Below, piece after piece: positions 2 to 25,360 of a stretch of DNA of 64,000 bases. A model generated the notes under the pieces. It was not told the DNA's origin. It saw nothing but the letters and a program-made list of their open reading frames with translations, and searched no databases. Every line of letters starts with the position of its first letter. Position 1 is the first letter of the stretch. Position numbers and translations under genes: made by a program. The DNA is taken from positions 186,001 to 250,000 of IMG/VR virus record IMGVR_UViG_3300024259_002152. One strand, given 5' to 3'.

Positions 2-115
2 TCAATAAAGATTAGGTCGAAGGGTGACGAGTTGGTTAGAGCTTTTACTGTTATCAGGGGAGAAGATTTTAAAAAGGTTATAGAACCATTCATAAAGGTG
101 CGAAATGATATTTAA
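2..115 (+). CDS. 3' end of an upstream gene (partial, unidentified)
   Basis: Frame 2 is open from the window edge (SIKIRSKGDELVRAF...KVRNDI*) to TAA at 113-115 and overlaps the neuC start. Not in the ORF track. Confidence 0.5.
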   Translation, partial: SIKIRSKGDELVRAFTVIRGEDFKKVIEPFIKVRNDI

Positions 116-1238
116 AAAAATATGTTATATTACTTCCAGCCGTTCTGATTATGCTAAAGTAAAAAATCTTCTAAAACAAATAAACGAGGACGATGAGTTT
201 GAGCTGTACATAATAGCCACTAGCGCTCAAATTAAACAAAGATTTGGAGATGGTGTTCAAGAATTAATTGATGATGGTTTAACAATACATAAAAGAGTTG
301 ATTGTATGGTTGAGGGAGACAATAGGCTTGCAATGTTAAAATCATCAGCCATGGAAATATATGAATTAACGAATATTATAGATGAATTAAAACCTGATCT
401 TGGCCTAGTAGTTGGAGATCGTTTTGATATGTTGACTTCTGTATATGTTCTTTCTATGATGAATATACCAATTGCCCATATACAGGGGGGAGAAAAAACA
501 GGAACGATAGATGATGTTATAAGGGATGTTATGACCAAATTTGCTCATATCCATTTTGTTTCAAATGAAGATGCTAGGCAAAGAGTTGAGTCTTTATCGG
601 AAGATAGACAATACATTTATAATGTCGGTTGTCCTAGCTTTGATTATATAAAAAGTTTAGATATACCTGACGATATTGATTATAATATTTTATTGCCTTT
701 TTGTAAAGACGATATTGATATTAGTAAAAAAGATGATTATTTTATTGTAATCGTACACCCAAACGTGGCGATAGAAGAAGATATAGATATGAAAATAATC
801 TTAGATGCATTAGATAATTTTGAGAATAAAAAAGCTATTTTTTATCCAAATACAGATCCATTTCATCAAAAGATTATTAATGCTATTAATAGAAAACACG
901 ATTATATGAAATTTAAACATATCTCTATGGAATGTTTTATGATGTTACTTAAACATTGCAAATGTATGATTGGTAATTCAAGTAGTGGTATCCGAGAAAC
1001 GTGTTTTTTTGGTGTTCCAACAGTTAATATAGGTAGAAGGCAAGAAGGTAGACTGAGTGGAAAGAATGTAGTTAATGTTAAATGCTCTGAGGACGACATC
1101 GTTAGTGGAATAAAATCAGTTTATAATAAAACTTTTGAGCCAGAATATCTTTATGGTAATGGGGCTTCAAGTGATAAGATTGTGGATATTTTGAAATCTT
1201 ATGATAATTTTGAATATAAAAATATATGTATTAAATAA
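105..1238 (+). CDS. neuC: UDP-N-acetylglucosamine 2-epimerase (hydrolysing), NeuC family
   Basis: Motifs ITSSRSDY, GDRFDML, HIQGGEKTGTID, MIGNSSSGIRE, NIGRRQEGR, YGNGASS. Confidence 0.92.
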   Translation: MIFKKICYITSSRSDYAKVKNLLKQINEDDEFELYIIATSAQIKQRFGDGVQELIDDGLTIHKRVDCMVEGDNRLAMLKSSAMEIYELTNIIDELKPDLGLVVGDRFDMLTSVYVLSMMNIPIAHIQGGEKTGTIDDVIRDVMTKFAHIHFVSNEDARQRVESLSEDRQYIYNVGCPSFDYIKSLDIPDDIDYNILLPFCKDDIDISKKDDYFIVIVHPNVAIEEDIDMKIILDALDNFENKKAIFYPNTDPFHQKIINAINRKHDYMKFKHISMECFMMLLKHCKCMIGNSSSGIRETCFFGVPTVNIGRRQEGRLSGKNVVNVKCSEDDIVSGIKSVYNKTFEPEYLYGNGASSDKIVDILKSYDNFEYKNICIK

Positions 1239-1901
1239 ATGAAAACACTGGCAATATATTTAAATGTTAGAAAAAATAGTTCTAGATGCAAAAATAAACT
1301 TCTTAAATTTTTTGCAGGAACATGTTTGTTCGATATCGCCTTAAAGAAGCTAGAACAAGTGAGGTCGGATGAAAAATTTGTTTGTGCTTATGATAGAGAG
1401 TTTTTTGAATATCAACATAATTCTTCTATTAAACATTATGTTAGAAGTAAAGAATCTGTATCTATTGATGGGCCATTAACAAAAGTATTTGAATGTTATA
1501 ATTCTTTTCAGTCTGACTATGTTATGTTTCTCAATCCTTCTCATGCCCATTTAAGAGTAGATACGATACAATCTGCTGTAGATTTTTTTAAAGCATCTAA
1601 TTATGAGTCCATGACATCTGTAGAAAAGATTAATGACTGGATATTTGATAATGATGGGAAGTTATTATATCCTTCTGATTTGGCCCATGGAGATACTAAA
1701 AGAACAGATCCTTCATATAGGGCTGCACATGCTTTTCATATATATAGTAGAAAAAGATTTATAGATAATAATGGATTGATATGGCCATGGCTGAAAAATG
1801 ATCCTCATTTATTTGAAATATCAAAGATAGAATCTTTGGATGTTGATGATGAGGTTGATTTTAAAATTAGTGAGTCTGTATACCTAGCGCATCTCGATTA
1901 A
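1239..1901 (+). CDS. Divergent acylneuraminate (CMP-nonulosonate) cytidylyltransferase, NeuA-like
   Basis: N-terminal VRKNSSRCKNK (ARxGSKxxxxKN-like), C-terminal LDVDDEVDF; directly follows neuC. Confidence 0.72.
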   Translation: MKTLAIYLNVRKNSSRCKNKLLKFFAGTCLFDIALKKLEQVRSDEKFVCAYDREFFEYQHNSSIKHYVRSKESVSIDGPLTKVFECYNSFQSDYVMFLNPSHAHLRVDTIQSAVDFFKASNYESMTSVEKINDWIFDNDGKLLYPSDLAHGDTKRTDPSYRAAHAFHIYSRKRFIDNNGLIWPWLKNDPHLFEISKIESLDVDDEVDFKISESVYLAHLD

Positions 1902-2511
1902 GATTCCAAAACTGATCTTGTTGATATGAGTATATTTTTATATCTTTGTTTATTAAATATACCAAAATTAATTTAAGAAATTTTCTGCTTCTATTTGTTT
2001 TTTCGATGCCTATTTCTTTATCAGCCCCATTGAAATGATGCATAGTTGTCTCTGTAGGTCCATCAAAACCTATTATATGAATATTTTTTGGTTGAAAAAA
2101 TACAGACGACAATAGACAGGCAAAGCCAGACCCTCCTGTTTTATGATTTATATACCCGTTTTGATTAATGTTTATTGTTTTAGTACTTTTAACTTTGTGA
2201 TTATAGTTAAGTAAATAAACGTGGGTTTTGTCTATTTTTTCAGGTACTTTTATTTTTGGGCCAACTATAATATGGTGAGATTCTCCTGGTTTATGAGTTT
2301 TAAGATATTGTTTAAAGAATATCTTATCTAGGAAAAGCATATAATCTACTTCTTTGGTTATCGGAGCTTTACGATTGGAGGATATAGAAGTTGTTTCTTT
2401 ATTATTTAATAAAGTTTCTATTTGTTTCCGATAAATAAGTGATGACGGACCTCCTCCTATGATGATTAAATTATCATAATTAGGAGTAGTATCAAAATTT
2501 AATATTTTCAT
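1867..2511 (-). CDS. DUF115/MAF_flag10 (MptE-like) domain protein
   Basis: IIIGGGPSS near the N-terminus, GGSGFACLLSS...IHIIGFDG; the only sizeable minus-strand gene in the first 62 kb. Confidence 0.6.
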   Translation of the reverse strand: MKILNFDTTPNYDNLIIIGGGPSSLIYRKQIETLLNNKETTSISSNRKAPITKEVDYMLFLDKIFFKQYLKTHKPGESHHIIVGPKIKVPEKIDKTHVYLLNYNHKVKSTKTININQNGYINHKTGGSGFACLLSSVFFQPKNIHIIGFDGPTETTMHHFNGADKEIGIEKTNRSRKFLKLILVYLINKDIKIYSYQQDQFWNLNRDALGIQTH

Positions 2512-2528
2512 AAATATAAGGAATAAGT

Positions 2529-3293
2529 ATGTTATCTTTTAATAAGTATCGACAAAAATCTATCCTTTTCATAGGACCGGGAGAATCAAAACAATATATA
2601 GATATGGAAAAGGCAATGGGAGATTCAGATTATACTGCTAGTCTTAATGATGGTATTTTAGATTATTTGACGGATTTTTATTTTGTAGGAGAAAAATTCA
2701 TATATGATTATGTAGAAAAAAAAGCTGTGTCTTCTTTTTTTGACACAACAGAAAAAATCTTTTTGGGTCTTCATAAGGCTCATAAAACAAGGATTGATCG
2801 TGAGTATTTTGATAATAAACAAAATAATAAGACATTTCATTTTGTAAAATCCATATCAGCATTAAAAGAAGTTTATTCTTATAATCTGGATTTAATTAGA
2901 AGTTTCAATAAGAAGAATATGAGAGTTTTATCTAATTTGTTGAATCATTTTCCATGTAAAAAATGGGAATATATTAGAGCTAGAACTCTGGCAAATTCTT
3001 TACAAATTTTATATAATTTGGGTTTTGAAGAAGTTAGGTTAATAGGATTTATGGATTCTTTTAAGTTTACTAGGCAAAATTATGAAAATCAAAAAGGATA
3101 TATAAAAGAAGCCAGAAAAAAAATAAAAGTTGCTTCTCCTCAAGATAGAAATGAAACAGAATTGAAAACTAGTTTTGAATATCAGGCCCAAATACTTAAA
3201 ACAGTAGATTATGTTTATAAGCTAAATAAAAGGAGAATTTACAATATGTGTCCAAAGGAGAAAAGTCCTCAAAATATATTAGATTATAAATAA
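2529..3293 (+). CDS. DUF115/MAF_flag10-like protein
   Basis: ILFIGPGES, LANSLQILYNLGFEEVRLIGFMDS. Confidence 0.55.
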   Translation: MLSFNKYRQKSILFIGPGESKQYIDMEKAMGDSDYTASLNDGILDYLTDFYFVGEKFIYDYVEKKAVSSFFDTTEKIFLGLHKAHKTRIDREYFDNKQNNKTFHFVKSISALKEVYSYNLDLIRSFNKKNMRVLSNLLNHFPCKKWEYIRARTLANSLQILYNLGFEEVRLIGFMDSFKFTRQNYENQKGYIKEARKKIKVASPQDRNETELKTSFEYQAQILKTVDYVYKLNKRRIYNMCPKEKSPQNILDYK

Positions 3294-3310: not shown

Positions 3311-4078
3311 ATGAAAGAAACATATATAGGGATTATACCTGCCAGATACCAGTCATCTAGATTTCCAGGAAAACCGTTATGTGATATTTTTGGTAAACCT
3401 ATGATTCAAAGAGTTTATGGGTCAATTATCGATTGGGATAAATGGAAAGCTGTTTATGTGGCTACCGATAATTTGCAAATTAAAGAAAAATGTGACGAAT
3501 TACAAATACCAGTGATCATGACTAAAGATACTCATACAGATTGTTTAGACAGGGCGGCAGAAGTTGCTGAATATTTAGAATCTAATAATAAAGGAGCAGA
3601 TAAATATATCGTTATTCAAGGAGACGAACCATTATTTAATGTAGATACTCTTAATACAGATTTATCCCCTTCTATTGTTAATTTCTATACTGAAGTACAT
3701 GATACATGTGATAAATATGATAGCAACGCTGTTAAGGTAGTTGTTTCTCGTAACGACAAGGCTCTTTATTTCTCGAGATATTCTATTCCCTATCATGATG
3801 AAAAGACAAAAAGGACTAACGATGAAGCAATTATTTTGAAACAAATAGGAGTTTATATGTTTACTGGGGAAATGTTAAAACTTTATAATGGTTTAAAGCA
3901 ATCTCCATTAGAGAATATGGAGGGTATAGGTTTAAATAGATTGTTGGAAAATGATATTGAAATTTATATGAGATATACTAAACATGATAGTATTAGCGTA
4001 GATACTCCTGAAGATAGAGACAGAATTGTAAAATTAATTAAACAATATCATTCTGATGGAGACTCTCATCTCGAATAA
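3311..4078 (+). CDS. kdsB: 3-deoxy-manno-octulosonate cytidylyltransferase (CMP-KDO synthetase)
   Basis: IIPARYQSSRFPGKPL, QGDEP, ALYFSRYSIPY, IGVY, SPLENMEG, SVDTPED. Confidence 0.92.
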   Translation: MKETYIGIIPARYQSSRFPGKPLCDIFGKPMIQRVYGSIIDWDKWKAVYVATDNLQIKEKCDELQIPVIMTKDTHTDCLDRAAEVAEYLESNNKGADKYIVIQGDEPLFNVDTLNTDLSPSIVNFYTEVHDTCDKYDSNAVKVVVSRNDKALYFSRYSIPYHDEKTKRTNDEAIILKQIGVYMFTGEMLKLYNGLKQSPLENMEGIGLNRLLENDIEIYMRYTKHDSISVDTPEDRDRIVKLIKQYHSDGDSHLE

Positions 4079-4169
4079 ATCAGAGGTATTGGAATGGGAA
4101 AAATATGGAGTGAAGTTATCAATAAGTTAAATCTGAAAAAAGTTGAGGAAAATGGTAGGGCAAATTTAT

Positions 4170-4871
4170 ATGGAAAAAGTTACTTTCACTACTACATCTT
4201 GTTGTAGAAGCGATTTACTCTATGAGACTTATAGTAGTTTTGTAAAGAATTTTGAAGGAATAGATTTTAATAAATCTATTTTATTTTTGAATCTAGATTA
4301 TTATGATGGTATAGGAGATATAGACAAAAGTATTACCGTGGCAAAGCAATTTTTTGGTGATGTAGTTCATAATATATCTGATGAGCCTAATTTTGCTAAA
4401 GCCGTTAAGTGGTGTTGGAGGCATAATTTTGATACTTCATATGTTTTTCATTTAGAGGAAGACTGGAAATTATTATCAAAAATTCATATAGAAAATATGA
4501 TTAATATTCTAGAAGGTGAAGATAAAAGTGTAATGAATGTAAGATTGAGACATCGGGGGAGGCTTCCAGAAGGTCGTTCTTCTGATATTACATTGTCTCC
4601 TTCATTATTTAAGAAAGAATTTTTAGAAATATGTGATTATATGCCCGATATATTTAATCCAGAAAAAGTAATAAGTAGATCATATTGCCTTGCAAGAAAA
4701 AAAATGTGTTCTATCTTAGAATTAGCTGTTATCAATTCTTATGTATTTACAAATTTAAATACTAATCTGGGTGAAAAAAATAATAGTATTGTAGAAGATA
4801 TAGGTAGATTATGGAAGAATGAGAATAAAATATATTTACATCCTAAGGGCACAGGATGGAGATTAGGGTAG
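4170..4871 (+). CDS. GT-A fold (GT2-like) glycosyltransferase
   Basis: TFTTTSCCRSDLLYET, YVFHLEEDW (DxD-equivalent). ATG at 4170 preferred to the track's TTG at 4143. Confidence 0.6.
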   Translation: MEKVTFTTTSCCRSDLLYETYSSFVKNFEGIDFNKSILFLNLDYYDGIGDIDKSITVAKQFFGDVVHNISDEPNFAKAVKWCWRHNFDTSYVFHLEEDWKLLSKIHIENMINILEGEDKSVMNVRLRHRGRLPEGRSSDITLSPSLFKKEFLEICDYMPDIFNPEKVISRSYCLARKKMCSILELAVINSYVFTNLNTNLGEKNNSIVEDIGRLWKNENKIYLHPKGTGWRLG

Positions 4872-4973: not shown

Positions 4974-5954
4974 ATGCATTTAAAAGTATTGTGTTTATCT
5001 TCTTTTAAAAAGGGAACCGCTCTTACTAATTTGATAAATATGACTCATTATAATCATCCTGAAGTAGAATTTATTTCTTATGAGCATGGACAGAAAGGGC
5101 ATGTTTGGCTAGGGAATAACACAACCCTATTTGAAGGGGAATCAAAAATAAGAAAAGTTGTTTTTGTTTGTTCTGTTCCAACTATCAGAAAACGCAATAG
5201 AATGGATGGTTGGGAGAATATGGATCATGTTGTATATCTTTCTGATTTTTGTAAAAATATTATTGAATCTGATCATAAATCAAACAGTAACTCTAAACTT
5301 TTATTTTTTGGTGGGCTTCCTGTCGATAATGATTTAAATCCTATAGATAAGCCTCGACACATTGATGGTCCCATTCAATTTATAGCTATAGCTAAATGGT
5401 ATAAAAGACGCTACAAAAGGCTTAAGCAGATAATTAAGCTTTATAATAGTTATTTGAAAAAAGAATATCCTGGTTCTATATTAAATATTATTGGGGCTGA
5501 AGATTACAGGAAAGACGGAAACATACACTACTATAAAAAATCTTTTCATAACAAAAAATTAATAGATATTTTTAAAAAATCTCATATTCAATTAACTCCT
5601 ACTCCATTTGATACTGGTCCAAAAACTATAGCAGAATCTCTTCACTATAGAGTCCCGTTTATTTGTAGTAACAATTGTGCTGGAATAGAATATATAAAAG
5701 TTTTGGGTAAGTGCGGAATAGAGGTCGATACGGACCCCTATATATCTAGTTTGAGCGATTATAATAAATATCAACCACTCTCTATGGTATCAAAAAATAA
5801 ATTTCATGCTAGACCCATTCCTTATGAAGATTATTTTGAAGCAGTTAAGCAAATAATTAATAATTTTGAAGAGTATACTTCTTGGCAGTGGAATGATAAA
5901 TTTAATTATACAAAACAATCAGATAGTTTATACAATATACTCAAAGGCAAATAA
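4974..5954 (+). CDS. GT-B fold (GT4-like) glycosyltransferase
   Basis: C-terminal IQLTPTPFDTGPKTIAESLHYRVPFICSN resembles the ExFGxxxxEA motif. Confidence 0.7.
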   Translation: MHLKVLCLSSFKKGTALTNLINMTHYNHPEVEFISYEHGQKGHVWLGNNTTLFEGESKIRKVVFVCSVPTIRKRNRMDGWENMDHVVYLSDFCKNIIESDHKSNSNSKLLFFGGLPVDNDLNPIDKPRHIDGPIQFIAIAKWYKRRYKRLKQIIKLYNSYLKKEYPGSILNIIGAEDYRKDGNIHYYKKSFHNKKLIDIFKKSHIQLTPTPFDTGPKTIAESLHYRVPFICSNNCAGIEYIKVLGKCGIEVDTDPYISSLSDYNKYQPLSMVSKNKFHARPIPYEDYFEAVKQIINNFEEYTSWQWNDKFNYTKQSDSLYNILKGK

Positions 5955-6572
5955 ATGGAAAAAATAAAATTAACAGAACATGACAAGAGAGAGCTTTTAA
6001 AGATAGTTAAACTTACTAATAAAAAAAATAGAACAAGTCCATATCAAGCTATCGGAGATTTAAAAGGAACAAGAAAAACAGAATTTAGATACAAATTCAT
6101 GAATTTACCAGAGGATTTTGAAGGTAAATCAGTATTAGATATAGGATGTAATTTAGGGGCTATGTCATACATGGCTAAACAGAGAGGAGCAGGGAGGGTC
6201 GTTGGTATTGATTATAATACAACTCTTTTAGAAACATCATCTAGCATATTTAAAAGACACAATTATGATATATCCCTTATTGGTTACGATTTGAACACAC
6301 AAGGATTTGAGCCATTGGTAAAAATTTTGAGAGAAGAGAAATTCGATTATATATTTGCTTTATCAATTTATCATCATGTTGATGATAAGAAAGTTTTATG
6401 GAATATAATTAACAATTACTGTAGTGATATTTGTTGGTTTGAAGGGCATAAGAGAAATACTAAAGAAGAATTGGAAAAAGAGTTATTATCTAATCTTCAC
6501 GCAAAAAAAATAGAATTCATAGGAAATATAAAAGATCATGTTCGTAGATCAATTTTTAAATGCGTATTTTAG
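5955..6572 (+). CDS. Class I SAM-dependent methyltransferase
   Basis: EGKSVLDIGCNLG...VVGID, FDYIFALSIYHH. Confidence 0.85.
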   Translation: MEKIKLTEHDKRELLKIVKLTNKKNRTSPYQAIGDLKGTRKTEFRYKFMNLPEDFEGKSVLDIGCNLGAMSYMAKQRGAGRVVGIDYNTTLLETSSSIFKRHNYDISLIGYDLNTQGFEPLVKILREEKFDYIFALSIYHHVDDKKVLWNIINNYCSDICWFEGHKRNTKEELEKELLSNLHAKKIEFIGNIKDHVRRSIFKCVF

Positions 6573-6583
6573 AGAGCAAAAAA

Positions 6584-7180
6584 ATGAATAACGAAAGAAA
6601 AAGATTAAAACATCAAGCCAGATTAAAAAGAAGAGAAAAAAGGGCAAAAATATCAGCAAATATTCCTAAAGAAGTAAAAGTTATAGATATGCAATTAGTA
6701 TATTATCCATATCGTCAATGGCAAGATGCGTTTCAAAAATATTGGAGAGAAGGTGATGATACTGTTTTTAAAATCATAAATTCACCATGGGCTTTGTTTG
6801 TTGAAGATTATCTTATATCGGGAGATGAGATATTAAAAAATATAGATGATCATGTTGTTTCTAAATGGGGATTTGAAGCATTTGAAATAGCTAAAAAAAA
6901 TATAGATAATATTCATCCTAAGAAAATGGATAAAAAAAGTCATGCTCGAAGATCTGCAAATAGGTTGATCAATTTAACAAAAAGCATAAAAGAATATGGT
7001 TATTGCGGTGGAGCATATAATTCTAATGATAATCTTATTAATGTTATAAAGAATTATATAGCACCTAACGGAAATAAAGGGTTCAAATTATTATATGGTA
7101 ATCGTAGAGCAGCAGTTTGTTCTGGCTTGGGTATGAAAAAAATAAAAGTTAGATGTTGGGACTATTATAAAACTAGTTAA
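6584..7180 (+). CDS. Hypothetical protein with basic N-terminus and possible ParB/Srx-like C-terminal motif
   Basis: RKRLKHQARLKRREKR; FKLLYGNRRAAVCSGLGMKKIKV. ATG 6584 preferred to 6560. Confidence 0.45.
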   Translation: MNNERKRLKHQARLKRREKRAKISANIPKEVKVIDMQLVYYPYRQWQDAFQKYWREGDDTVFKIINSPWALFVEDYLISGDEILKNIDDHVVSKWGFEAFEIAKKNIDNIHPKKMDKKSHARRSANRLINLTKSIKEYGYCGGAYNSNDNLINVIKNYIAPNGNKGFKLLYGNRRAAVCSGLGMKKIKVRCWDYYKTS

Positions 7181-7206: not shown

Positions 7207-7620
7207 ATGAAAAATAAAAAAATAGTATTTACTAACGGATGTTTCGATATTATTCATAGAGGTCATATTGACTATTTAGAAGAAGCAAAAAAATTGGGAG
7301 ATATTCTTCTAATAGGTTTGAATAGTGATGAATCAGTGAGAAAATTAAAAGGTGAAAATAGACCTATTAATAATGAAGAGGATAGAAAAAAAGTTTTACT
7401 GGCTTTGAAAAGTGTAGATGAGGTTATTATTTTTAATGAGGAAGACCCCTTAGAATTAGTAAAACAAATAAAACCAGATGTCATTGTCAAGGGGGGCGAT
7501 TGGAAAATAGAAAATATGATTGGTGCTGATTTTGTGATAGAAAATGGAGGAGAAGCATATTCTTTACCTTTCTATGATGGATATTCAACTACTAACATAT
7601 TGAATAAAATGAAAGATTAA
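7207..7620 (+). CDS. rfaE2: Stand-alone D-glycero-beta-D-manno-heptose 1-phosphate adenylyltransferase (HldE C-terminal/RfaE2 type)
   Basis: VFTNGCFDIIHRGH, GLNSDESVRKLKGENRPIN, VKGGDW, YSTTNI. Confidence 0.92.
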   Translation: MKNKKIVFTNGCFDIIHRGHIDYLEEAKKLGDILLIGLNSDESVRKLKGENRPINNEEDRKKVLLALKSVDEVIIFNEEDPLELVKQIKPDVIVKGGDWKIENMIGADFVIENGGEAYSLPFYDGYSTTNILNKMKD

Positions 7621-7663
7621 ATATGAATATTTTTATTGTTGATTGTTATGGAGGTTATTTATA

Positions 7664-18374: not shown

Positions 18375-18388
18375 GAAAGGTATATAAT

Positions 18389-19378
18389 ATGATTTCACAG
18401 GAAGTGTTAGAAAGTTTTGGAAGTAAATCTTGTTTAGTTACTGGAGGAACTGGGCTCATAGGCAGACAGGTGGTTAAAATATTATGTGATGCTGGTGCTA
18501 ATGTTACAATTATATCTTTAGATGATATCGATGTTGACAAAAGAGCTATACATTTGGCAGGAGACTTATGCGATTTTAATATTTGTAGGCAAATAACGGC
18601 AGGTAAGGATTATGTGTTTCATATAGCTGGGATAAAAGGATCAGTAAAAGTTACTAGGGAAAAACCATCTAGTTTTTTTGTTCCTTTACTTATGATGAAT
18701 ACCAATATTCTAGAAGCTTGTAGAATTAATAATGTTAAGAAGGTAGTATATACGAGTTCTGTAGGGGCTTATTCTAGCGCTGAGGTATTTAAAGAAGATG
18801 AGAACTTAACAGGAGAACCTATGGACTTGTTCCCTGGATGGGCTAAAAGAATGGCCGAAAAACAAATTGAATCATATGCTATTCAATATGGTTTAAAGAA
18901 CTTTGCAGTTGTTAGACCTGCTAATATATATGGGCCAGGAGACAACTTTGATCCAGATAATGCTATGGTTATTCCTACTCTTATGCAAAGAATATATAAG
19001 AAGGAAGATCCTGTAATTATTTGGGGAGATGGCTCTGCTATAAGGGATTTTGCTTATAGTAAAGATATTGCTGAGGGAATTGTTCAAGCTTTGTGTCATG
19101 GTACTGAAGGAAAATTTGTGAACCTTGGAAGTGGAAAAGGAGTCACAATCAGAGAATTAGTGGAGGCTCTTCATAGCTTTTTAGATTTTAATTATGAGTT
19201 TGATACTAGTAAACCTTCTGGTTTTCCTAGAAGGGTAATGGATATTTCTTTGGCTGAAAAGATGATATGTTACAACCCTTCAACGTCTTTAGTTGACGGG
19301 CTTAAAGAAACATGGGAGTGGTTCGTGAATAATGCCGATGAATATAAAAATAGAAAAAACTATTTTACGGAAGAATAA
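18389..19378 (+). CDS. NAD-dependent epimerase/reductase (GDP-fucose-synthase-like SDR), paralogue 2
   Basis: TGGTGLIG, FHIAG, VRPANIYGPGDNF, WGDGSAIRDF; the YxxxK position reads PGWAK. Confidence 0.85.
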   Translation: MISQEVLESFGSKSCLVTGGTGLIGRQVVKILCDAGANVTIISLDDIDVDKRAIHLAGDLCDFNICRQITAGKDYVFHIAGIKGSVKVTREKPSSFFVPLLMMNTNILEACRINNVKKVVYTSSVGAYSSAEVFKEDENLTGEPMDLFPGWAKRMAEKQIESYAIQYGLKNFAVVRPANIYGPGDNFDPDNAMVIPTLMQRIYKKEDPVIIWGDGSAIRDFAYSKDIAEGIVQALCHGTEGKFVNLGSGKGVTIRELVEALHSFLDFNYEFDTSKPSGFPRRVMDISLAEKMICYNPSTSLVDGLKETWEWFVNNADEYKNRKNYFTEE

Positions 19379-19379
19379 G

Positions 19380-19910
19380 ATGAAGGCAGAAAAAACGAAT
19401 TTACCAGGGGTTTTATTATTTGAACATGAGTGTTTTGAAGATCATCGTGGCACTTATGAAGAATTGTATAATAAAATCAAATTTGATGAAGTATGTCAAG
19501 AATATATTGGTTATACAATAAGTTTTTTAGAAACTAATATAGCATTATCTTCTAAACATGTGTTGAGAGGTATTCATGGAGATGACAGGACTTGGAAATA
19601 TGTAACTTGTTTAAAAGGAAAATATTTTATTAATGTTTTGTGTTATGATAAAGTATCTGAATATTATGGGAAGCACCAAAGTTTTGTTCTGAGCGAACAA
19701 AATAAGAAACAACTTCTTATACCTCCTCTCCATGGTCATGGTTATGTTGTTATGAGTGAGGAAGCCATTTTCTATTATCAACAATCTTGTACTTATAGAG
19801 GTATGGGAGAGCAATTTACCATTAGGTATAATGATGAAAGATTTAATATGTGGTGGCCTATTAAAAATCCAATTTTATCTCAAAGAGATGAGGCTGGAAA
19901 GGTGGTTTAG
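19380..19910 (+). CDS. rmlC: dTDP-4-dehydrorhamnose 3,5-epimerase family (cupin)
   Basis: FEDHRG, HVLRGIHG, LIPPLHGHGY, WPIKNPILSQRD; ATG 19380. Confidence 0.88.
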   Translation: MKAEKTNLPGVLLFEHECFEDHRGTYEELYNKIKFDEVCQEYIGYTISFLETNIALSSKHVLRGIHGDDRTWKYVTCLKGKYFINVLCYDKVSEYYGKHQSFVLSEQNKKQLLIPPLHGHGYVVMSEEAIFYYQQSCTYRGMGEQFTIRYNDERFNMWWPIKNPILSQRDEAGKVV

Positions 19911-19928
19911 TAAAAAAGAAAGGGAATT

Positions 19929-20891
19929 ATGTTTTTTAAAGATAAAAATATTTTAGTAACAGGGGCATCTGGATTTACGGGAACTAATCTTATTAAAAGA
20001 TTGCTAGAAGAAGGTTCTAATGTCAGGGGGGTATTGCATCATAAAGAACCTCAAACTGATTTTGATTCTAATAAAATTAGTTATATGTGGGGTGATTTAA
20101 CTAATAAAGAAGATTGCAAAAAAGTAGTAGATGGAATTGATTATGTTTTTATGTGCTCTGCAAATACATCTGGTGCGGCAGTTATGGAAAGTACCCCTTT
20201 GGCTCATGTTACTCCAAATGTGATTATGAACGCTTTAATGCTAGAAGCTGCTTATGAGGCAGGGGTAAAAAAGTTTATGTTTATGAGTAGTACGACCGTA
20301 TATCCTATTTCTGAATATCCTTTGAAAGAAGATGATATTAGTGACGAGTTTTATAGTAAATATTTTTTTGTTGGGTGGATGAAAAGATTTTCAGAAATTA
20401 TGTGTGAAATGTATGGCAGCAAAATCAAAAAACCAATGACAACAATAATAATTAGACCAGGGAATTTGTATGGAGATTATGATGATTATGAGTGGGATAC
20501 TTCTCATTCGACTGCTGCTTTAATTAGAAGGGTAGTAGAAAGACATGATCCATTGGTGGTTTGGGGAGATGGAAGTGATTTAAAAGATATTACTTATATC
20601 TCTGATTTGATTGATGGAATAATTACTTCTATGGAGAATATCGAAAAATTTACTATTATTAATATAGCTAGCGGTAAATCTTATAGTATTAAAGAAACAT
20701 TAAATACCATTCTGGAAGTAGATGGCTATACAGATGCTAATGTGGAATACGATTTAACTAAACCCACTATGATTCCTAAAAGATTGATAGATATAACTAA
20801 GGCGAAAGAGTTGATAGATTTTAAACCTAAATTTGATTTGAGGTCCGGTATAGAGAGGACCATAAAACATTATAGAGAAAATAATAAATAA
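19929..20891 (+). CDS. NAD-dependent epimerase/reductase (GDP-fucose-synthase-like SDR), paralogue 3
   Basis: TGASGFTG, IRPGNLYG, HSTAALIRR, WGDGS; the YxxxK position reads VGWMK. Confidence 0.85.
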   Translation: MFFKDKNILVTGASGFTGTNLIKRLLEEGSNVRGVLHHKEPQTDFDSNKISYMWGDLTNKEDCKKVVDGIDYVFMCSANTSGAAVMESTPLAHVTPNVIMNALMLEAAYEAGVKKFMFMSSTTVYPISEYPLKEDDISDEFYSKYFFVGWMKRFSEIMCEMYGSKIKKPMTTIIIRPGNLYGDYDDYEWDTSHSTAALIRRVVERHDPLVVWGDGSDLKDITYISDLIDGIITSMENIEKFTIINIASGKSYSIKETLNTILEVDGYTDANVEYDLTKPTMIPKRLIDITKAKELIDFKPKFDLRSGIERTIKHYRENNK

Positions 20892-22305: not shown

Positions 22306-22329
22306 ATAAAAATATAGGAGATATGTAAC

Positions 22330-22764: not shown

Positions 22765-22866
22765 GGAACAAAAGTTTTTTTAAGAATGTTATCATAGATG
22801 AAATTAATTAGAGATTTATACATGGGCGATACAAAATAAACAAAAATATTTTTAATGGAGAATAAA

Positions 22867-23661
22867 ATGCAAAAAGTGGGTATTATAGGTTATGGGATAA
22901 TAGGTCAAGCAGTAGCTAAGCTATTTACAGGCAAAGCACAGTTGTGTATATATGATTCTAATCCTAGAACTATTTTTAACACAGAAGAGCACAAAAAATC
23001 TATTAATAATTGTAATATAGCTTTTATATGCGTTCCTACTCCTCATAATCAATATGATGGTTTAGATATGTCCATTGTGGAGAGAGTGGTAAAAGAGTTG
23101 AATCCAGGAATATTTGTATGTTGTTCTGCTTTACAACCTGGCACAGCAGATAACTTAACAAAAGAATATAGAAAAAAAATAGTTGTTCAACCAGAATATT
23201 TTGGAGAGACTACCAATCATCCTCTTACTAACTTATCTCAAAGTCCATTTCTGATTTTAGGAGGAGAGAATAAAGATGTAGGTGAAGTTATAAGATTATA
23301 TCAAAAAGTATATAACGCGAGTGTGAGAATAAGAAAGGTAACAGCTTTAGAAGCAGAAGTGATCAAACTTTCAGAGAATAGAGCCATAGCATATAAAGTC
23401 GCTCAGTGTCAAGAACTATACGATGTTTGTCAAAAATCAGGGGTTGATTATGAAACTATTAGACAGGCAGTTTATGGCGATGACCCTAGGTTTAATTTGT
23501 GGTGGACTTTTGTATATGATGATAATAGGGGATTAAATTCTAAATGCATTCCTAAAGATGTTTATGGATGGCACAAATGGGCAGAAGATGCTGGGATAAA
23601 CCCAGAGCTTACCGGAAGTTTATTAGAATATAATAATACTTTGATAAAGAAAGATAAATAA
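22867..23661 (+). CDS. Short UDP-glucose/GDP-mannose dehydrogenase family protein 1 (divergent)
   Basis: IIGYGIIG, FICVPTP, QPEY, EVIKLSEN, SKCIPKD; no C-terminal domain. ATG 22867 has a GGAG SD (track start 22855). Confidence 0.75.
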   Translation: MQKVGIIGYGIIGQAVAKLFTGKAQLCIYDSNPRTIFNTEEHKKSINNCNIAFICVPTPHNQYDGLDMSIVERVVKELNPGIFVCCSALQPGTADNLTKEYRKKIVVQPEYFGETTNHPLTNLSQSPFLILGGENKDVGEVIRLYQKVYNASVRIRKVTALEAEVIKLSENRAIAYKVAQCQELYDVCQKSGVDYETIRQAVYGDDPRFNLWWTFVYDDNRGLNSKCIPKDVYGWHKWAEDAGINPELTGSLLEYNNTLIKKDK

Positions 23662-23663
23662 AT

Positions 23664-24512
23664 ATGAAAAATACAATCGGCGTGATTGGTTGCGGTTTTG
23701 TTGGAAAGGCGGTGACGAAAGGATTCGCGCAATTTTCGGACGTGAAGATATATGATATAGATGAGAAAAAATCAACCCACAATTTTGAAGAAGTAATAAG
23801 TTGTGAGTTTGTATTTTTATGTTTGCCAACTCCTATGATTTCCGCAGAAGGTGGAAAAACTAATTTAACTATATTTGAAAAATGTATTGCAGATATAGAT
23901 AATATTAAAGATAGAAATAAGGGCTCTATTTATATTATTAAATCTACAGTGCCAATAGGAACGACTAAAAGACTATCTGCACAATACCCACATATGCATT
24001 TAGTGCATTGTCCAGAATTTTTAACAGCTCGTTCCTATCTGATTGATTTTATTTGTCCATCTAGGAATATAGTTGGATGTGAAAATATATTTGTAGGGGG
24101 GAAAGTTAAAAGCTTGTTAGAAGATAGATTTCCAGGAACTCTATGTATAATGATGACATCTCAAGAGTCTGAAACAGTTAAATATATGTCAAATGCCTTT
24201 TTGGCAACCAAAGTTATGTTTTTTAACGAGATGAAATTACTAACTGATAAAAAGAATTTATCCTGGGACAAAATTTTAGAAGGAGTTATGAGTGATGGAA
24301 GAATAGGGACATCGCACTATCAAGTGCCAGGGCATGATGGGCAAATGGGATTTGGGGGTGTGTGTTTTCCTAAGGATATTAATTCTTTGATTGATACAAT
24401 GGAAAAGAGCGGTATTGATCCGATAGTTTTAAAGGCAGTGTGGGAACAAAATAAAAAGATCAGAAAAAATTGGGGTTGGGAAAATGATACTTCTGCTGTC
24501 ATGAAAGATTAA
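23664..24512 (+). CDS. Short UDP-glucose/GDP-mannose dehydrogenase family protein 2
   Basis: VIGCGFVG, LPTP, KSTVPIGT, CPEFL, ETVKYMSNAFLATKV, GFGGVCFPKD; ends soon after PKD. Confidence 0.88.
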   Translation: MKNTIGVIGCGFVGKAVTKGFAQFSDVKIYDIDEKKSTHNFEEVISCEFVFLCLPTPMISAEGGKTNLTIFEKCIADIDNIKDRNKGSIYIIKSTVPIGTTKRLSAQYPHMHLVHCPEFLTARSYLIDFICPSRNIVGCENIFVGGKVKSLLEDRFPGTLCIMMTSQESETVKYMSNAFLATKVMFFNEMKLLTDKKNLSWDKILEGVMSDGRIGTSHYQVPGHDGQMGFGGVCFPKDINSLIDTMEKSGIDPIVLKAVWEQNKKIRKNWGWENDTSAVMKD

Positions 24513-24520
24513 TAGTAAGT

Positions 24521-25360
24521 ATGCATTTAAACAGGAAGAAAATCAAACAAAATAAATTGAAGATTTCTCCTAGGGGAGGGAAAAAAAAGAAGATAAAAAT
24601 AGCTGATCCAAAACCAGTTGTTAGACCCGTCAAAAGATCTAAAAAGAAAAATAAACAATTAAGAATTAGTAAGACATCTGGTTTAAATAGTATAGATATT
24701 AAGAATTTTGGGGATAAGTCACTTTATAAACCAATTCGTGAATGGAAAAGCTTATTAGAAGGACAAGCAGCTTTTATATTGGGGAATGCTCCCAGCATAA
24801 CGAGACAGAATCTAGATATTTTGAATCCGTATTTTACGATAGGTGTTAATAGGATATTATATATTTTTACTCCGACTATATTGATTTGGCAAGATATTCA
24901 GATGTGGAATAGCGAAAAGAAAAAAATAGCTAATAATAAATCGTTAAAAATATGTAATAGCGTTAGTGATCCTCGTAAGGCATTTCTAAATTTTAAAGTT
25001 AAGGGTGGAAATTTTAAATTCGGGAATGATCCTTCCATATTGCATGGTACAGGGAATACTACAGCTTTAGCAGCTCAACTAGCTGTTAATTTAGGTTGTT
25101 CGGATATAATTTTATTAGGAACAGATTGTCAATATCAATCTGGAAAAACAGATTTTTATGGCAAGAATAAAGATCATAAATCATATACGTTAAAAATGTG
25201 TAACGTGGCTATGGAGTGGATGAGAGACAATTGTCCTATTCCTGTACATAATTGTAGTAAGAATAAGCTCTGGCCTGAAGAAAATATAGTAGATGTTATA
25301 AAAAAATTAGGCCCTAAGAAACTAAATAGAAAAGAATATATTAGAAAGTTTAAACGATAA
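24521..25360 (+). CDS. DUF115/MAF_flag10-like protein with Lys/Arg-rich N-terminus
   Basis: FILGNAPSI, TIGVNR, GNTTALAAQLAVNLGCSDIILLGTDCQY. Confidence 0.7.
   Translation: MHLNRKKIKQNKLKISPRGGKKKKIKIADPKPVVRPVKRSKKKNKQLRISKTSGLNSIDIKNFGDKSLYKPIREWKSLLEGQAAFILGNAPSITRQNLDILNPYFTIGVNRILYIFTPTILIWQDIQMWNSEKKKIANNKSLKICNSVSDPRKAFLNFKVKGGNFKFGNDPSILHGTGNTTALAAQLAVNLGCSDIILLGTDCQYQSGKTDFYGKNKDHKSYTLKMCNVAMEWMRDNCPIPVHNCSKNKLWPEENIVDVIKKLGPKKLNRKEYIRKFKR

What the first reader, a model, noticed from the sequence alone, without database searches (positions are those of the whole stretch)
105..25360. About 25-kb sugar biosynthesis and modification cluster with no export or polymerisation machinery
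Seen: about 29 consecutive genes for nucleotide-sugar synthesis, activation, methylation and C-C chemistry, only two classical GTs, and nothing resembling Wzx/Wzy, Wzm/Wzt, Wza/Wzc or a polyprenol-phosphate initiating transferase (no multi-TM protein in the region). Established: cellular O-antigen and capsule loci usually carry such membrane genes. Inference: the sugars go onto cytoplasmic acceptors, such as virion proteins (the poly-Ser proteins at 50.7-55.8 kb) or phage DNA, rather than a cell-surface polysaccharide.
Basis: partly seen in the sequence, partly recalled or inferred. Interest (0 to 1): 0.75.

Follow-up and report, generated by a model that had tools for sequence, protein, structure and literature searches.

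The report
Huge marine phage's protein-glycosylation island
The 25 kb of sugar genes is the right-hand end of a roughly 65-78 kb glycan-building island in a huge marine phage that has no membrane export genes, so it most likely decorates the phage's own mucin-like poly-serine proteins inside the cell, much as giant viruses sugar-coat their particles.

Summary
Window 105-25360 carries 29 tightly packed ORFs; 23 have Pfam matches to sugar-nucleotide, methylation, ThDP or radical-SAM chemistry, and none has a multi-pass membrane segment.

The size and the glycosyltransferase (GT) count are artefacts of the window edge. The window lies in a 350,866-bp IMG/VR phage record from seawater (CheckV 73% complete). 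The island runs without a break from genome 146.5 to 211.4 kb, with outliers from 133 kb. It holds 3 NeuB synthases, about 4 CMP-sugar synthetases, a GDP-fucose pair, 11 GT2/GT4 domains, 2 weak NodZ-like genes and 7 short Maf/sialyltransferase-like genes.

No Wzx, no Bac_transf and no protein with 6 or more TM segments occurs in the record. The same is true of a collinear, 100%-complete 548-kb relative and of 72 related viral loci. Cellular homologues of the ThDP cassette usually do have 8-12-TM neighbours.

The two poly-Ser proteins flank a GT whose only PDB relatives are polypeptide GalNAc-transferases. This pairing with a Ser- or Thr-tract protein recurs in four other phage contigs.

Cytoplasmic O-glycosylation of phage proteins is the best reading (about 0.55). 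Virion location is unproven. Host-envelope and DNA targets are not excluded.

The parts
105..1238 (+). UDP-GlcNAc 2-epimerase (NeuC-type). It follows a NeuB synthase that lies just upstream of the window.
   Evidence: PF02350, 215.8 bits. The NeuB gene is at L001:18158-19159, 253 bits.
1239..1901 (+). Weak CMP-sugar (acylneuraminate/Kdo-type) cytidylyltransferase
   Evidence: PF02348, 23.9 bits against a cut-off of 22.6.
1867..2511 (-). Short Maf/MptE-like (sialyltransferase-like) protein. It is the only minus-strand gene in the island.
   Evidence: PF01973, 19.9 bits, below cut-off.
2529..3293 (+). ORF of unknown function inside the island
   Evidence: No Pfam match.
3311..4078 (+). CMP-nonulosonate/Kdo synthetase family
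   Evidence: PF02348, 135.6 bits. 78% identical to a gene in the collinear island of G002.
4143..4871 (+). Unknown function; one of three paralogues in the island
   Evidence: blastp 34-38% to genome ORFs g177 and g178. No Pfam match.
4974..5954 (+). Weak GT-B (GT4-like) glycosyltransferase
   Evidence: PF00534, 21.1 bits, below cut-off.
5955..7180 (+). SAM methyltransferase (5955-6572) followed by an unknown ORF (6560-7180)
   Evidence: Methyltransf_25/31/11. The unknown ORF is a paralogue of g180.
7207..8599 (+). TagD-like cytidylyltransferase (7207-7620) and D-2-hydroxyacid dehydrogenase (7643-8599)
   Evidence: PF01467, 82.7 bits. PF02826, 169 bits.
8631..20891 (+). Twelve-gene deoxysugar, C-C branching cassette. 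Order: NDP-hexose 4,6-dehydratase, E1 alpha, E1 beta, transketolase-N, transketolase-C, unknown ORF, aldo-keto reductase, TylF-like methyltransferase, SDR, radical SAM, SDR, RmlC-like epimerase, SDR.
   Evidence: Pfam. Collinear at 40-67% identity with a 57%-GC Pseudomonadota MAG contig, L091, and at 39-78% with phage G002.
20920..22764 (+). B12-binding radical-SAM enzyme (probable C-methyltransferase) and a 144-aa ORF
   Evidence: PF02310 plus PF04055. The 144-aa ORF has a 40% homologue in L091.
22855..24512 (+). Two truncated UDP-glucose/GDP-mannose dehydrogenase-like proteins (268 and 282 aa)
   Evidence: PF03721 plus PF00984, no C-terminal domain. The second is 75% identical to the gene beside the Maf-like anchor in L005.
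24521..25360 (+). Maf/sialyltransferase-like protein. This is the conserved right-hand anchor of the island.
   Evidence: PF01973, 31.9 bits. 104 homologues, many on contigs of 200-550 kb. AF2 model with pLDDT 85; its fold matches MptE, the CstII GT42 sialyltransferase, Maf 5mu5 and GT29 sialyltransferases. 55-76% identical in relatives, followed there by the same RlaP and TopA genes.
49993..50709 (+). Peptidase_C39_2-like cysteine peptidase, conserved beside the poly-Ser module
   Evidence: PF13529, 43.4 bits. The same position is seen in L007, L083, L128, L129 and G002.
50722..52296 (+). Poly-Ser protein 1. It has a Cys-rich tandem beta-sandwich N-domain, a 103-residue Ser tract (nt 51778-52086) and a short Cys-rich C-terminus. 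There is no signal peptide.
   Evidence: Translation. The tract uses 5 synonymous Ser codons from both codon boxes.
52328..54010 (+). Polypeptide-GalNAc-transferase-like GT-A enzyme. The catalytic domain is roughly residues 318-540. The N-terminal 300 residues contain Cys clusters. There is no TM segment and no lectin domain.
   Evidence: PF00535, 26.2 bits. The top 15 PDB sequence matches are all ppGalNAc-Ts, best E 1.5e-9. D403-x-H405, the E-W-G-W-E-N motif and H528 are invariant in 9 homologues.
54010..55839 (+). Poly-Ser protein 2. It is a paralogue of protein 1 (68% identical in the N-domain) with a 139-residue Ser tract (nt 55075-55491) and a different C-terminal domain.
   Evidence: Translation; alignment. 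AF2 model of the N-domain has pLDDT 87.5 and is a tandem Ig/FN3-like sandwich. In-frame 3-nt indels occur in the tract among seawater samples.
55947..56996 (+). Third paralogue of the N-domain, without a Ser tract
   Evidence: Best blastp match of two N-domain genes in the relative L083, 54-59% identity.

Best explanation
The 25-kb stretch is the distal 40% of a mosaic glycan-synthesis island that a huge marine phage carries in order to glycosylate protein acceptors in the host cytoplasm. No lipid carrier or membrane step is involved.

Shown:
- The island encodes routes to several activated sugars. These are CMP-nonulosonic acids (three NeuB synthases, a NeuC-type epimerase, about four CMP-synthetases), GDP-fucose (Gmd plus an Fcl-like reductase), a 6-deoxyhexose that is C-branched by ThDP enzymes and C- and O-methylated, and a CDP-linked alcohol or acid.
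- It also encodes more than 20 soluble transferases of the GT2, GT4, weak NodZ-like and short Maf/sialyltransferase-like kinds.
- Neither this record nor a complete collinear relative contains a polyprenol-phosphate transferase, flippase, polymerase or ABC exporter.
- 25 kb downstream, a polypeptide-GalNAc-transferase-like enzyme lies between two signal-peptide-less proteins that each carry a 100-140-residue pure Ser tract.

Inferred:
- That enzyme adds the first HexNAc to the Ser tracts, as in mucin-type O-glycosylation.
- The island's GT2, GT4 and fucosyl-type enzymes extend the chains.
- The Maf-like enzymes add CMP-activated nonulosonic acids, either as caps or directly on Ser/Thr as on flagellins.
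- The methyltransferases finish the glycan.
- The products are released at lysis, most plausibly as glycosylated fibres on the particle. The conserved Ig/FN3-like N-domain would serve as anchor, the glycosylated Ser tract as a stiff spacer and the variable C-terminus as the tip.
For: Nature of the genome. IMG/VR virus record of 350,866 bp, 32% GC, with 429 of 460 ORFs on one strand and phage replication genes. It is found in at least 10 seawater metagenomes.

Extent and content of the island..

No membrane machinery. PF01943 and PF02397 give 0 matches, and no ORF in the record has 6 or more TM segments. The 548-kb relative G002 (CheckV 100%) has a collinear 78-kb island at 50-78% identity and also lacks any real protein with 6 or more TM segments. 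Across 72 IMG/VR loci with a Maf-like gene, none has such an ORF within 10 kb. As a positive control, 7 of the 9 cellular loci of 13 kb or more that carry the homologous ThDP cassette have ORFs with 8-12 TM segments.

Protein-directed transferases. For the GT27-like enzyme. The Maf-like fold matches CstII, Maf and GT29. A Maf-CMP-synthetase-NeuB cassette recurs in 12-14 viral loci.

Enzyme-substrate adjacency. Only 2 of the 460 ORFs have Ser tracts, and both flank the GT27-like gene; by chance this is about 1 in 10^5. The same pairing occurs in L083/G001, L008 and L129. In L131, a 52%-GC phage, the partner has a poly-Thr tract instead. In G002 a Maf-like gene abuts a 171-Ser protein.

The Ser tracts are selected at the protein level. 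They use 5-6 synonymous codons from both boxes. They occur in at least 12 full-length family members. Length variants are in frame.
Against: - No experimental datum exists. Glycosylation, donor specificity and virion location are all inferred.
- The poly-Ser module is 25 kb from the island, among replication and two-component-signalling genes rather than in a recognisable structural module.
- The GT27-like gene is absent from G002, G003, G004 and G005, so it cannot be the general entry point for the island's products.
- Six of the 7 Maf-like matches are below Pfam's cut-off. The best fold match is an archaeal pterin pyrophosphokinase, and TM-scores are only 0.35-0.49.
- Soluble GTs can also act on lipid-linked intermediates started by host enzymes, so lack of membrane genes does not exclude a host-envelope target.
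- The record is only about 73% complete.
- The complex prediction for the GT with the poly-Ser protein gave no answer.
Confidence: 0.55

Rival explanations
1. Host-envelope remodelling. The phage supplies nucleotide sugars and peripheral GTs that feed the host's own undecaprenyl-phosphate-linked O-antigen, capsule or S-layer pathway, or the host's flagellin or pilin glycosylation. This would change the infected cell's surface, for example to exclude superinfecting phages, and would rely on host initiating transferase, flippase and polymerase.
For: Most GT2 and GT4 enzymes of polysaccharide pathways are soluble or peripheral, so their presence without membrane partners is compatible with this reading. 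The ThDP/deoxysugar cassette has cellular homologues that usually sit beside 8-12-TM proteins, that is in envelope-glycan loci. L091 is collinear over 12 genes. Huge-phage GTs have been grouped with cell-envelope functions in the literature (10.64898/2026.10.24.761521).
Against: Known phage seroconversion modules are small and do carry their own membrane components. Here 65-78 kb of genes lack any, even in a complete relative. The Maf-like, NeuB and CMP-synthetase combination is the hallmark of lipid-independent protein glycosylation. The phage encodes its own mucin-like candidate substrates with a dedicated polypeptide-type GT. No flagellin gene is in the record, and the host is unknown.
Confidence: 0.22
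2. DNA hypermodification. The sugars are attached to hydroxymethylated pyrimidines of the phage genome to evade restriction and CRISPR.
For: Virus-encoded GTs that hypermodify DNA with diverse glycans are known (10.1101/2023.12.21.572611). A divergent thymidylate-synthase-family gene, the family that includes pyrimidine hydroxymethylases, lies at genome 249,540-250,499 (PF00303, 37 bits; PDB ThyA E = 0.004).
Against: To my knowledge, no known DNA modification uses nonulosonic acids, fucose or C-branched deoxysugars, nor needs more than 20 transferases. The thymidylate-synthase-like gene is 38 kb away from the island and may be an ordinary ThyA. The GT27-like and Maf-like enzymes resemble protein- or glycan-directed enzymes.
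Confidence: 0.05
3. Small-molecule or free-glycan product. The deoxysugar, ThDP and B12-radical-SAM genes build a glycosylated secondary metabolite or a soluble oligosaccharide that acts inside or outside the infected cell.
For: From general knowledge, E1-type and transketolase-type ThDP enzymes, class-B radical-SAM methylases and TylF-like O-methyltransferases are typical of antibiotic deoxysugar pathways.
Against: No PKS, NRPS or aglycone genes were seen among the ORFs annotated. The cassette is embedded among NeuB, CMP-synthetase, Maf and GT genes, and in cells its homologues lie in loci with multi-TM glycan-type proteins.
Confidence: 0.05
4. Artefact. The sugar region is bacterial DNA mis-joined to a phage contig, or inert recently acquired cargo.
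For: The record is a metagenomic assembly without terminal repeats. Parts of the island have 40-67% identical bacterial counterparts.
Against: GC content (29-34%), GC skew and gene orientation are continuous with the flanks. The whole island is collinear in an independent 548-kb phage genome and is anchored by the same Maf-RlaP-TopA genes in at least 5 other contigs. The bacterial counterpart has 57% GC, so the phage copies are long ameliorated.
Confidence: 0.02

Closest known systems
Bacterial flagellin glycosylation islands (Campylobacter, Helicobacter, Aeromonas, Clostridium; Maf-type nonulosonic-acid O-glycosylation)
   Same: NeuB-family synthases, CMP-nonulosonate synthetases, several PF01973 (Maf) paralogues, methyltransferases and extra GTs lie together. 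Glycosylation is cytoplasmic, on Ser/Thr, with no lipid carrier or flippase. Gene content is mosaic and strain-variable (papers listed; PMC11339370).
   Different: The island is encoded by a phage and no flagellin gene is in the record. The Maf-like proteins are 210-290 aa single domains, not multi-domain Mafs of about 600 aa. No DegT-type aminotransferase for the pseudaminic or legionaminic acid precursors is present. The island is three to four times larger and adds fucose and C-branched deoxysugar routes.
Giant-virus (Mimivirus/Megavirinae, chlorovirus) autonomous glycosylation of capsid fibrils (PMC9614988)
   Same: The virus encodes its own nucleotide-sugar pathways and soluble GTs. Gene clusters are clade-specific and variable. 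Glycans are placed on virion proteins without the cellular membrane pathway.
   Different: Those viruses infect eukaryotes. Here the virus infects a bacterium. The sugars differ, and virion glycosylation has not been demonstrated here.
Mycobacteriophage virion glycosylation (Freeman et al. 2023, cited in PMC12619734)
   Same: Phage-encoded GTs O-glycosylate the phage's own structural proteins in the cytoplasm.
   Different: Those phages carry 1-4 GTs and use host sugar nucleotides. This island has about 80 genes, including complete donor pathways, and has mucin-like dedicated substrates.
Eukaryotic mucin-type O-glycosylation (polypeptide GalNAc-transferases, CAZy GT27, acting on Ser/Thr-rich mucin domains)
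   Same: The GT-A catalytic domain has the DxH motif, the downstream His ligand and a Gal/GalNAc-T-like motif. All 15 best PDB matches are ppGalNAc-Ts. It sits next to proteins with long Ser or Thr tracts. Fucose and sialic-acid-type donors are available for elongation.
   Different: There is no TM anchor and no ricin-type lectin domain. It scores only E = 5e-10 to a true ppGalNAc-T in a profile search and only PF00535 in Pfam. It is cytoplasmic rather than in the Golgi. The donor sugar is unknown.
Serine-rich repeat glycoproteins of Gram-positive bacteria (GspB, Fap1, SraP, with GtfA/GtfB and accessory Sec)
   Same: Very long Ser-rich tracts are O-glycosylated in the cytoplasm by dedicated soluble GTs encoded next to the substrate. 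The architecture is that of a fibre-like adhesin.
   Different: There is no signal peptide, no LPXTG anchor and no SecA2/SecY2. The tracts are almost pure Ser rather than SxSx dipeptide repeats. The initiating GT is GT-A (GT27-like), not the GT-B GtfA/B pair.
O-antigen and capsule loci (Wzx/Wzy, ABC-transporter or synthase dependent)
   Same: Dense co-oriented sugar-nucleotide and GT genes with mosaic variability. The ThDP/deoxysugar cassette is shared with such cellular loci.
   Different: Initiating transferase, flippase, polymerase, chain-length regulator and exporter are all missing from the record and from a complete relative.

Membership tests
Cell-surface polysaccharide locus (O-antigen/capsule) | Polyprenol-phosphate initiating transferase (Bac_transf PF02397, or WecA/MraY-type with 10-11 TM segments) | tested here: not met
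   PF02397 gives 0 matches in the 351-kb record, while the controls are positive. No ORF has 6 or more TM segments. PF00953 was not scanned directly.
Cell-surface polysaccharide locus (O-antigen/capsule) | Flippase plus polymerase (Wzx/Wzy) or ABC-2 exporter (Wzm/Wzt) | tested here: not met
   PF01943 gives 0 matches. The hydropathy scan of all six frames finds only a GluR0-like channel and one unknown 354-aa protein. The complete relative G002 also lacks them. Caveat: this record is about 73% complete.
Cell-surface polysaccharide locus (O-antigen/capsule) | Clustered nucleotide-sugar synthesis genes and glycosyltransferases | tested here: met
Maf-type nonulosonic-acid protein O-glycosylation island | NeuB-family nonulosonate synthase plus CMP-nonulosonate synthetase | tested here: met
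   NeuB x3, at 173-253 bits. CTP_transf_3 x3 above cut-off, plus one paralogue. One NeuB is 3e-51 to N. meningitidis NeuB.
Maf-type nonulosonic-acid protein O-glycosylation island | Maf transferase (PF01973 domain with a sialyltransferase-like fold) | tested here: inconclusive
   Seven PF01973 matches, only one above cut-off (44.8 bits). The AF2 model matches CstII, Maf 5mu5 and GT29, but also the MptE kinase, with TM 0.35-0.49. The proteins are 210-290 aa, lacking the flanking domains of full-length Mafs.
Maf-type nonulosonic-acid protein O-glycosylation island | Flagellin as acceptor | tested here: not met
   PF00669 gives 0 matches in the record. Host flagellin cannot be examined because the host is unknown.
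Polypeptide GalNAc-transferase (CAZy GT27) | GT-A catalytic domain with DxH and a downstream His as metal ligands | tested here: met
   The DAH motif and the His of 'SHLFR' align to the corresponding residues of ppGalNAc-T structures and are invariant in 9 homologues.
Polypeptide GalNAc-transferase (CAZy GT27) | Gal/GalNAc-T motif (WGGENxE) | tested here: met
   WGWENVE aligns to WGGENIE/WGGENLE. E503, E506 and W507 are invariant. One Gly is replaced by Trp.
Polypeptide GalNAc-transferase (CAZy GT27) | C-terminal ricin-type lectin domain and N-terminal type-II membrane anchor | tested here: not met
   Pfam finds only PF00535. There is no TM segment. The protein ends about 20 residues after the catalytic domain. 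A true ppGalNAc-T (P0208, with PF02709 and PF00652) is only a distant match at E = 4.6e-10.
Polypeptide GalNAc-transferase (CAZy GT27) | [quoted passage not shown] | not testable with these tools
   The only evidence is gene adjacency to Ser- or Thr-tract proteins in 5 contexts. The complex prediction gave no answer.
Serine-rich repeat glycoprotein system (SRRP, GtfAB, aSec) | Long Ser-rich tract protein encoded next to its dedicated cytoplasmic GT | tested here: met
Serine-rich repeat glycoprotein system (SRRP, GtfAB, aSec) | Signal peptide, cell-wall anchor, and SecA2/SecY2 export | tested here: not met
   The N-termini are hydrophilic and there is no C-terminal LPXTG. No multi-TM SecY-like protein is in the record.
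Virus-encoded autonomous virion glycosylation (giant viruses, mycobacteriophages) | Virus encodes donor pathways and/or GTs without membrane machinery | tested here: met
Virus-encoded autonomous virion glycosylation (giant viruses, mycobacteriophages) | Glycans demonstrated on virion proteins | not testable with these tools
   This needs particles. The N-domain fold (tandem Ig/FN3-like) resembles many phage tail and fibre proteins only generically.

The most novel reading that the evidence does not exclude
A clade of 300-550-kb marine phages builds a mucin-like glycoprotein coat. Poly-Ser or poly-Thr fibres are O-glycosylated in the bacterial cytoplasm by a phage homologue of the animal mucin-initiating enzyme. 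The chains are then elongated with fucose, sialic-acid-type nonulosonic acids and C-branched, methylated deoxysugars from an autonomous 65-78-kb island. This would be the bacterial-virus counterpart of the giant-virus glycan fibrils and the largest glycosylation system known in a phage.
Probability: 0.35. Interest if true: 0.85.

Novelty: new variant of a known kind. Interest (0 to 1): 0.75.

Why it matters
If the reading is right, bacteriophages can, like giant viruses, carry a complete membrane-independent glycosylation factory taking up about a fifth of the genome, and can make mucin-like glycoproteins.

- It would change how we think about the surface chemistry of large marine virions, including stickiness to particles and hosts, resistance to proteases and grazers, and antigenic diversity.
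- It would give a prokaryotic-virus relative of the polypeptide GalNAc-transferases.
- It would provide a set of compact, soluble enzymes for glyco-engineering: short Maf/sialyltransferase-like proteins, and ThDP and B12-radical-SAM sugar-branching cassettes.
- It makes the question 'what do huge phages do with their many glycosyltransferases?' directly testable, because one enzyme-substrate pair can be expressed in E. coli.

Tried and rejected
- Complex prediction of the GT27-like enzyme with the first 400 residues of poly-Ser protein 2 gave 'no answer' (score 0.00), so it is not evidence either way.
- The search for related loci in viral contigs found nothing with the GT27-like protein. With the single N-domain it found one locus.
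- The genome search could not reach the records behind L005-L008.
- PDB sequence searches of the Maf-like protein and of ORF 13284-14231 gave nothing usable.
- The only 5-6-TM protein outside the ion channel (genome 305,324-306,388) has no informative relative in Pfam or the ESM Atlas, and nothing suggests a glycan transporter.
- Two attempts to locate the virion module through the phage collection failed. The 2,221-aa giant ORF has no match, and a 552-aa ORF is an AAA-ATPase.
- A 7-'TM' ORF at the start of G002 is a low-complexity antisense artefact and was discarded.
- I first read the island as wholly hypervariable, from L005 and L006. I revised this after G002 proved collinear over 78 kb. 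It is a conserved backbone with swapped cassettes, mainly next to the right-hand anchor.
- The 'moraphage' lineage paper (PMC12619734) mentions core GTs, but I could not tie this genome to that lineage.

Full report
WHAT THE WINDOW IS

The 64-kb window is bases 186,001-250,000 of a single 350,866-bp contig. The tools identify this contig as an IMG/VR virus record: linear, with CheckV completeness 73%. It has 32% GC with a uniformly positive GC skew. By my ORF call it is about 94% coding, with 429 of 460 ORFs on one strand.

The window's right half carries phage-type replication genes. These include topoisomerase I, a clamp loader, a sliding clamp, a Holliday-junction resolvase and a CCA-adding enzyme. 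Ten or more independent seawater metagenomes hold at least a third of the sampled words of window 50,000-56,000. This is therefore a huge marine phage. Its host is unknown.

CHECK OF THE OBSERVATION

Between 105 and 25,360 there are 29 back-to-back ORFs. Pfam matches 23 of them to sugar-nucleotide and tailoring chemistry:
- a NeuC-type UDP-GlcNAc 2-epimerase;
- two CTP_transf_3 cytidylyltransferases;
- a TagD-like cytidylyltransferase;
- a 2-hydroxyacid dehydrogenase;
- an NDP-hexose 4,6-dehydratase and three further SDR enzymes;
- an RmlC-like epimerase;
- an E1 alpha/beta pair and a split transketolase;
- an aldo-keto reductase;
- methyltransferases;
- a radical-SAM and a B12-radical-SAM enzyme;
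- two truncated UDPG/GDP-Man-dehydrogenase-like proteins;
- one weak GT-B;
- two MptE/Maf-like proteins.

No ORF in the region has more than one marginal hydrophobic window.

THE REAL EXTENT OF THE CLUSTER

The left edge of the finding is only the edge of the window. Upstream, in genome coordinates, Pfam finds the following:
- three NeuB synthases (146,501; 172,006; 184,158);
- further CMP-synthetases;
- a Gmd/Fcl-like GDP-fucose pair (156,881-158,832);
- a GT4-GT2 fusion;
- several GT2 and GT4 genes;
- two weak NodZ-like genes;
- FkbM- and TylF-like methyltransferases;
- another B12-radical SAM and a radical SAM.

Whole-record scans give 8 GT2 and 8 GT1/4 domain matches, of which 11 are in the island, and 7 PF01973 matches. 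The contiguous island is therefore about 146.5-211.4 kb, which is 65 kb and about 80 ORFs. Maf-like and CMP-synthetase-like outliers reach back to 133 kb, interspersed with a homing endonuclease and an Apyc1-like gene. 'Only two classical GTs' and '25 kb' are thus window artefacts.

IS THE MEMBRANE MACHINERY REALLY ABSENT?

In the record:
- PF01943 (Wzx) and PF02397 (Bac_transf) have no match, while both ring in most control genomes.
- No ORF, called or in any open frame, has 6 or more hydropathy segments at a normal threshold.
- The two multi-pass proteins are a GluR0-like ligand-gated channel and an unknown 354-aa protein far from the island.

The record is incomplete, so I examined relatives. 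IMGVR_UViG_3300033145_003233 (G002) is 547,943 bp with CheckV 100%. It shares 302 of 737 ORFs with this phage. It carries the island collinearly over 78 kb (312-391 kb) at mostly 50-78% identity. It has no genuine protein with 6 or more TM segments either.

Across 72 IMG/VR loci that carry a Maf-like homologue, no ORF within 10 kb has 6 or more segments.

The same scan does find such proteins where expected. Of the 9 cellular loci of 13 kb or more that carry homologues of the ThDP cassette, 7 have ORFs with 8-12 segments nearby. The absence is therefore real and is a property of the phage lineage.

ANATOMY AND EVOLUTION OF THE ISLAND

The right end is anchored by the Maf-like gene at 24,521-25,360. 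In relatives this gene is 55-76% identical and is followed by the same small genes, an RlaP nucleotidyltransferase and TopA.

Immediately left of the anchor, the content differs between relatives. L005 and L006 carry LicD, SPASM radical-SAM, hexapeptide acetyltransferase and GFO/IDH genes there instead. Farther left, the order is conserved with G002. The island is therefore a conserved backbone with exchangeable cassettes.

One cassette, window 8,631-20,891, is collinear gene for gene with a 57%-GC Pseudomonadota MAG contig at 40-67% identity. Partial versions occur in Omnitrophota, Planctomycetia, Elusimicrobia and Pelagibacteraceae genomes. It was therefore exchanged with cells, and in the phage it has since taken on the phage's 30-34% GC.

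A second recurrent unit in more distant viral contigs is Maf-like, CMP-synthetase, NeuB and sometimes radical SAM. This links the Maf-like proteins to CMP-activated ulosonic acids.

The Maf-like model (pLDDT 85) matches the MptE kinase, the CstII GT42 sialyltransferase, the Magnetospirillum Maf and GT29 sialyltransferases, with modest TM-scores.

No DegT-type aminotransferase is present. One NeuB, which lies next to the NeuC-type epimerase, is closest to N. meningitidis sialic-acid synthase. The simplest product is therefore a Neu5Ac-type acid. This last step is an inference.

THE CANDIDATE ACCEPTORS

Only two of the 460 ORFs contain long Ser tracts. These are window 50,722-52,296 and 54,010-55,839. 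They are paralogues with the following features:
- a Cys-rich N-domain of about 350 residues, predicted with pLDDT 87.5 as tandem Ig/FN3-like sandwiches;
- a Ser tract of 103 and 139 residues respectively;
- unrelated C-termini;
- no signal peptide.

The tracts are encoded by 5-6 synonymous Ser codons from both codon boxes. They show in-frame 3-nt length variants among seawater samples. They recur after the same N-domain in at least 12 of 61 family representatives. Selection is therefore acting on the amino acid. A third N-domain paralogue without a tract follows at 55,947-56,996.

Exactly between the two poly-Ser genes lies a 560-aa protein whose C-terminal GT-A domain passes Pfam GT2. Its 15 best PDB sequence matches are all polypeptide GalNAc-transferases, with best E 1.5e-9. 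The DxH motif, the WGGEN-like motif and the downstream His are all aligned, and they are invariant in its homologues.

It lacks the lectin domain and the membrane anchor. A profile search reaches a true ppGalNAc-T only at E = 5e-10. It is therefore GT27-like rather than a demonstrated GT27 member.

The pairing is not a one-off:
- The closest relative (G001/L083) has peptidase, N-domain, GT, then N-domain with 56 Ser.
- L008 has a 45-Ser protein directly upstream of the GT.
- L129 has a tract of at least 82 Ser.
- L131 is an unrelated 52%-GC phage contig with a head-tail adaptor gene 3 kb away. There the GT follows a small protein with a poly-Thr tract of about 100 residues.

A switch from Ser to Thr with the enzyme retained is what an O-glycosylation substrate would show.

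In G002, which lacks this GT, a Maf-like gene abuts a 171-Ser protein, and four more Ser-tract proteins exist. Two of these share a domain with this phage's 2,221-aa giant ORF.

MECHANISM PROPOSED

Shown: donor pathways, many soluble transferases, no lipid or membrane step, and a polypeptide-type GT flanked by Ser-tract proteins.

Inferred:
- The GT27-like enzyme primes the Ser tracts with HexNAc in the cytoplasm.
- The island's GT2, GT4 and fucosyl-type enzymes elongate the chains.
- The Maf-like enzymes add nonulosonic acids.
- Methyltransferases and the products of the branched-sugar cassette diversify the chains.
- The glycoproteins leave the cell at lysis, most plausibly as fibres on the particle.

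The link between the big island and these particular acceptors, and their virion location, are the weakest steps.

RIVALS

- Host-envelope remodelling through host lipid-linked machinery remains possible, because soluble GTs do not by themselves exclude it (about 0.2).
- DNA glycosylation has only a divergent thymidylate-synthase-like gene in its favour.
- A small-molecule product and an assembly artefact are both unlikely, given the collinear island in independent genomes.

COMPARISON WITH WHAT IS KNOWN, AND NOVELTY

The system works most like a flagellin glycosylation island, or like the giant-virus fibril glycosylation clusters (PMC9614988). The poly-Ser module parallels mucin-type O-glycosylation and the serine-rich-repeat adhesins.

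Phage virion glycosylation is known from mycobacteriophages, which use a few GTs (cited in PMC12619734). Recent surveys of huge phages note abundant GTs but treat them as auxiliary or envelope-related (10.64898/2026.10.24.761521).

My full-text searches found no description of a phage ppGalNAc-T-like enzyme, of phage poly-Ser glycoprotein candidates, or of a phage island of this size. The library is incomplete, so this is not proof of novelty. I rate the finding a new variant of a known kind, with interest 0.75.

Noticed in passing
window 57354-59459 (+), 62534-62947 (-), 62928-63398 (-): The phage encodes a two-component system. The sensor histidine kinase has 2 TM segments plus Cache, PAS, HisKA and HATPase domains. 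The two response regulators are assigned by 57-67% identity to genes with Response_reg in L007 and L008. The system is conserved next to the poly-Ser module in relatives.
   Followed up: partly
genome 271,707-272,867 (L003:3707-4867), outside the window: GluR0-like ligand-gated ion channel in a phage genome, combining SBP_bac_3, Lig_chan and Ion_trans_2 domains.
   Followed up: no
genome 143,722-144,498 and 142,802-143,725 (L009): An Apyc1-like metallo-beta-lactamase-fold protein (an anti-Pycsar family; 58 bits against a cut-off of 50) and a LAGLIDADG homing endonuclease are interspersed among the outlying Maf-like and CMP-synthetase genes.
   Followed up: no
genome 249,540-250,499 (window 63,540 to beyond the window end; L084:540-1499): Divergent thymidylate-synthase-family protein (PF00303, 37 bits over part of the model; PDB ThyA E = 0.004). 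It could be an ordinary ThyA or a pyrimidine hydroxymethylase.
   Followed up: partly
genome 37,800-92,427, then 92,771-95,820: A run of 14 giant ORFs (650-2,221 aa, S+T 12-18%) is followed directly by a second small GT2-GT4-GT2 cluster. The 2,221-aa ORF has no match in the phage collection, but it shares a domain with two Ser-tract proteins of the relative G002.
   Followed up: partly
window 49993-50709: A Peptidase_C39_2-like cysteine peptidase always accompanies the N-domain and GT27-like module in relatives. The N-termini of the N-domain family are strongly conserved, so proteolytic processing is conceivable but untested.
   Followed up: partly
window 46035-48548: An unusually long (837-aa) tRNA nucleotidyltransferase (CCA-adding)-like protein with an N-terminal extension of about 200 aa. 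It is conserved in relatives. No tRNA gene is in the window.
   Followed up: no
window 51,778-52,086 and 55,075-55,491: Short-read contigs from four seawater samples all break at the two Ser-tract regions, so the exact tract lengths in the record are uncertain. In-frame AGT insertions and a 3-nt deletion are seen at 55,230-55,341.
   Followed up: yes
L131:3857-4621 (NCBI SDBT01005132.1): A 254-aa protein with a poly-Thr tract of about 100 residues and a Cys-rich C-terminus lies next to a GT27-like homologue. The contig is an unrelated 52%-GC phage that also carries an SU10-type head-tail adaptor gene.
   Followed up: partly
genome 136,685-137,800 (L009:10685-11800) and 135,650-136,681: A protein with eight DUF4116 repeats and a DUF3326 protein (246 bits) lie between the two outlying Maf-like genes. 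Their function is unknown.
   Followed up: no
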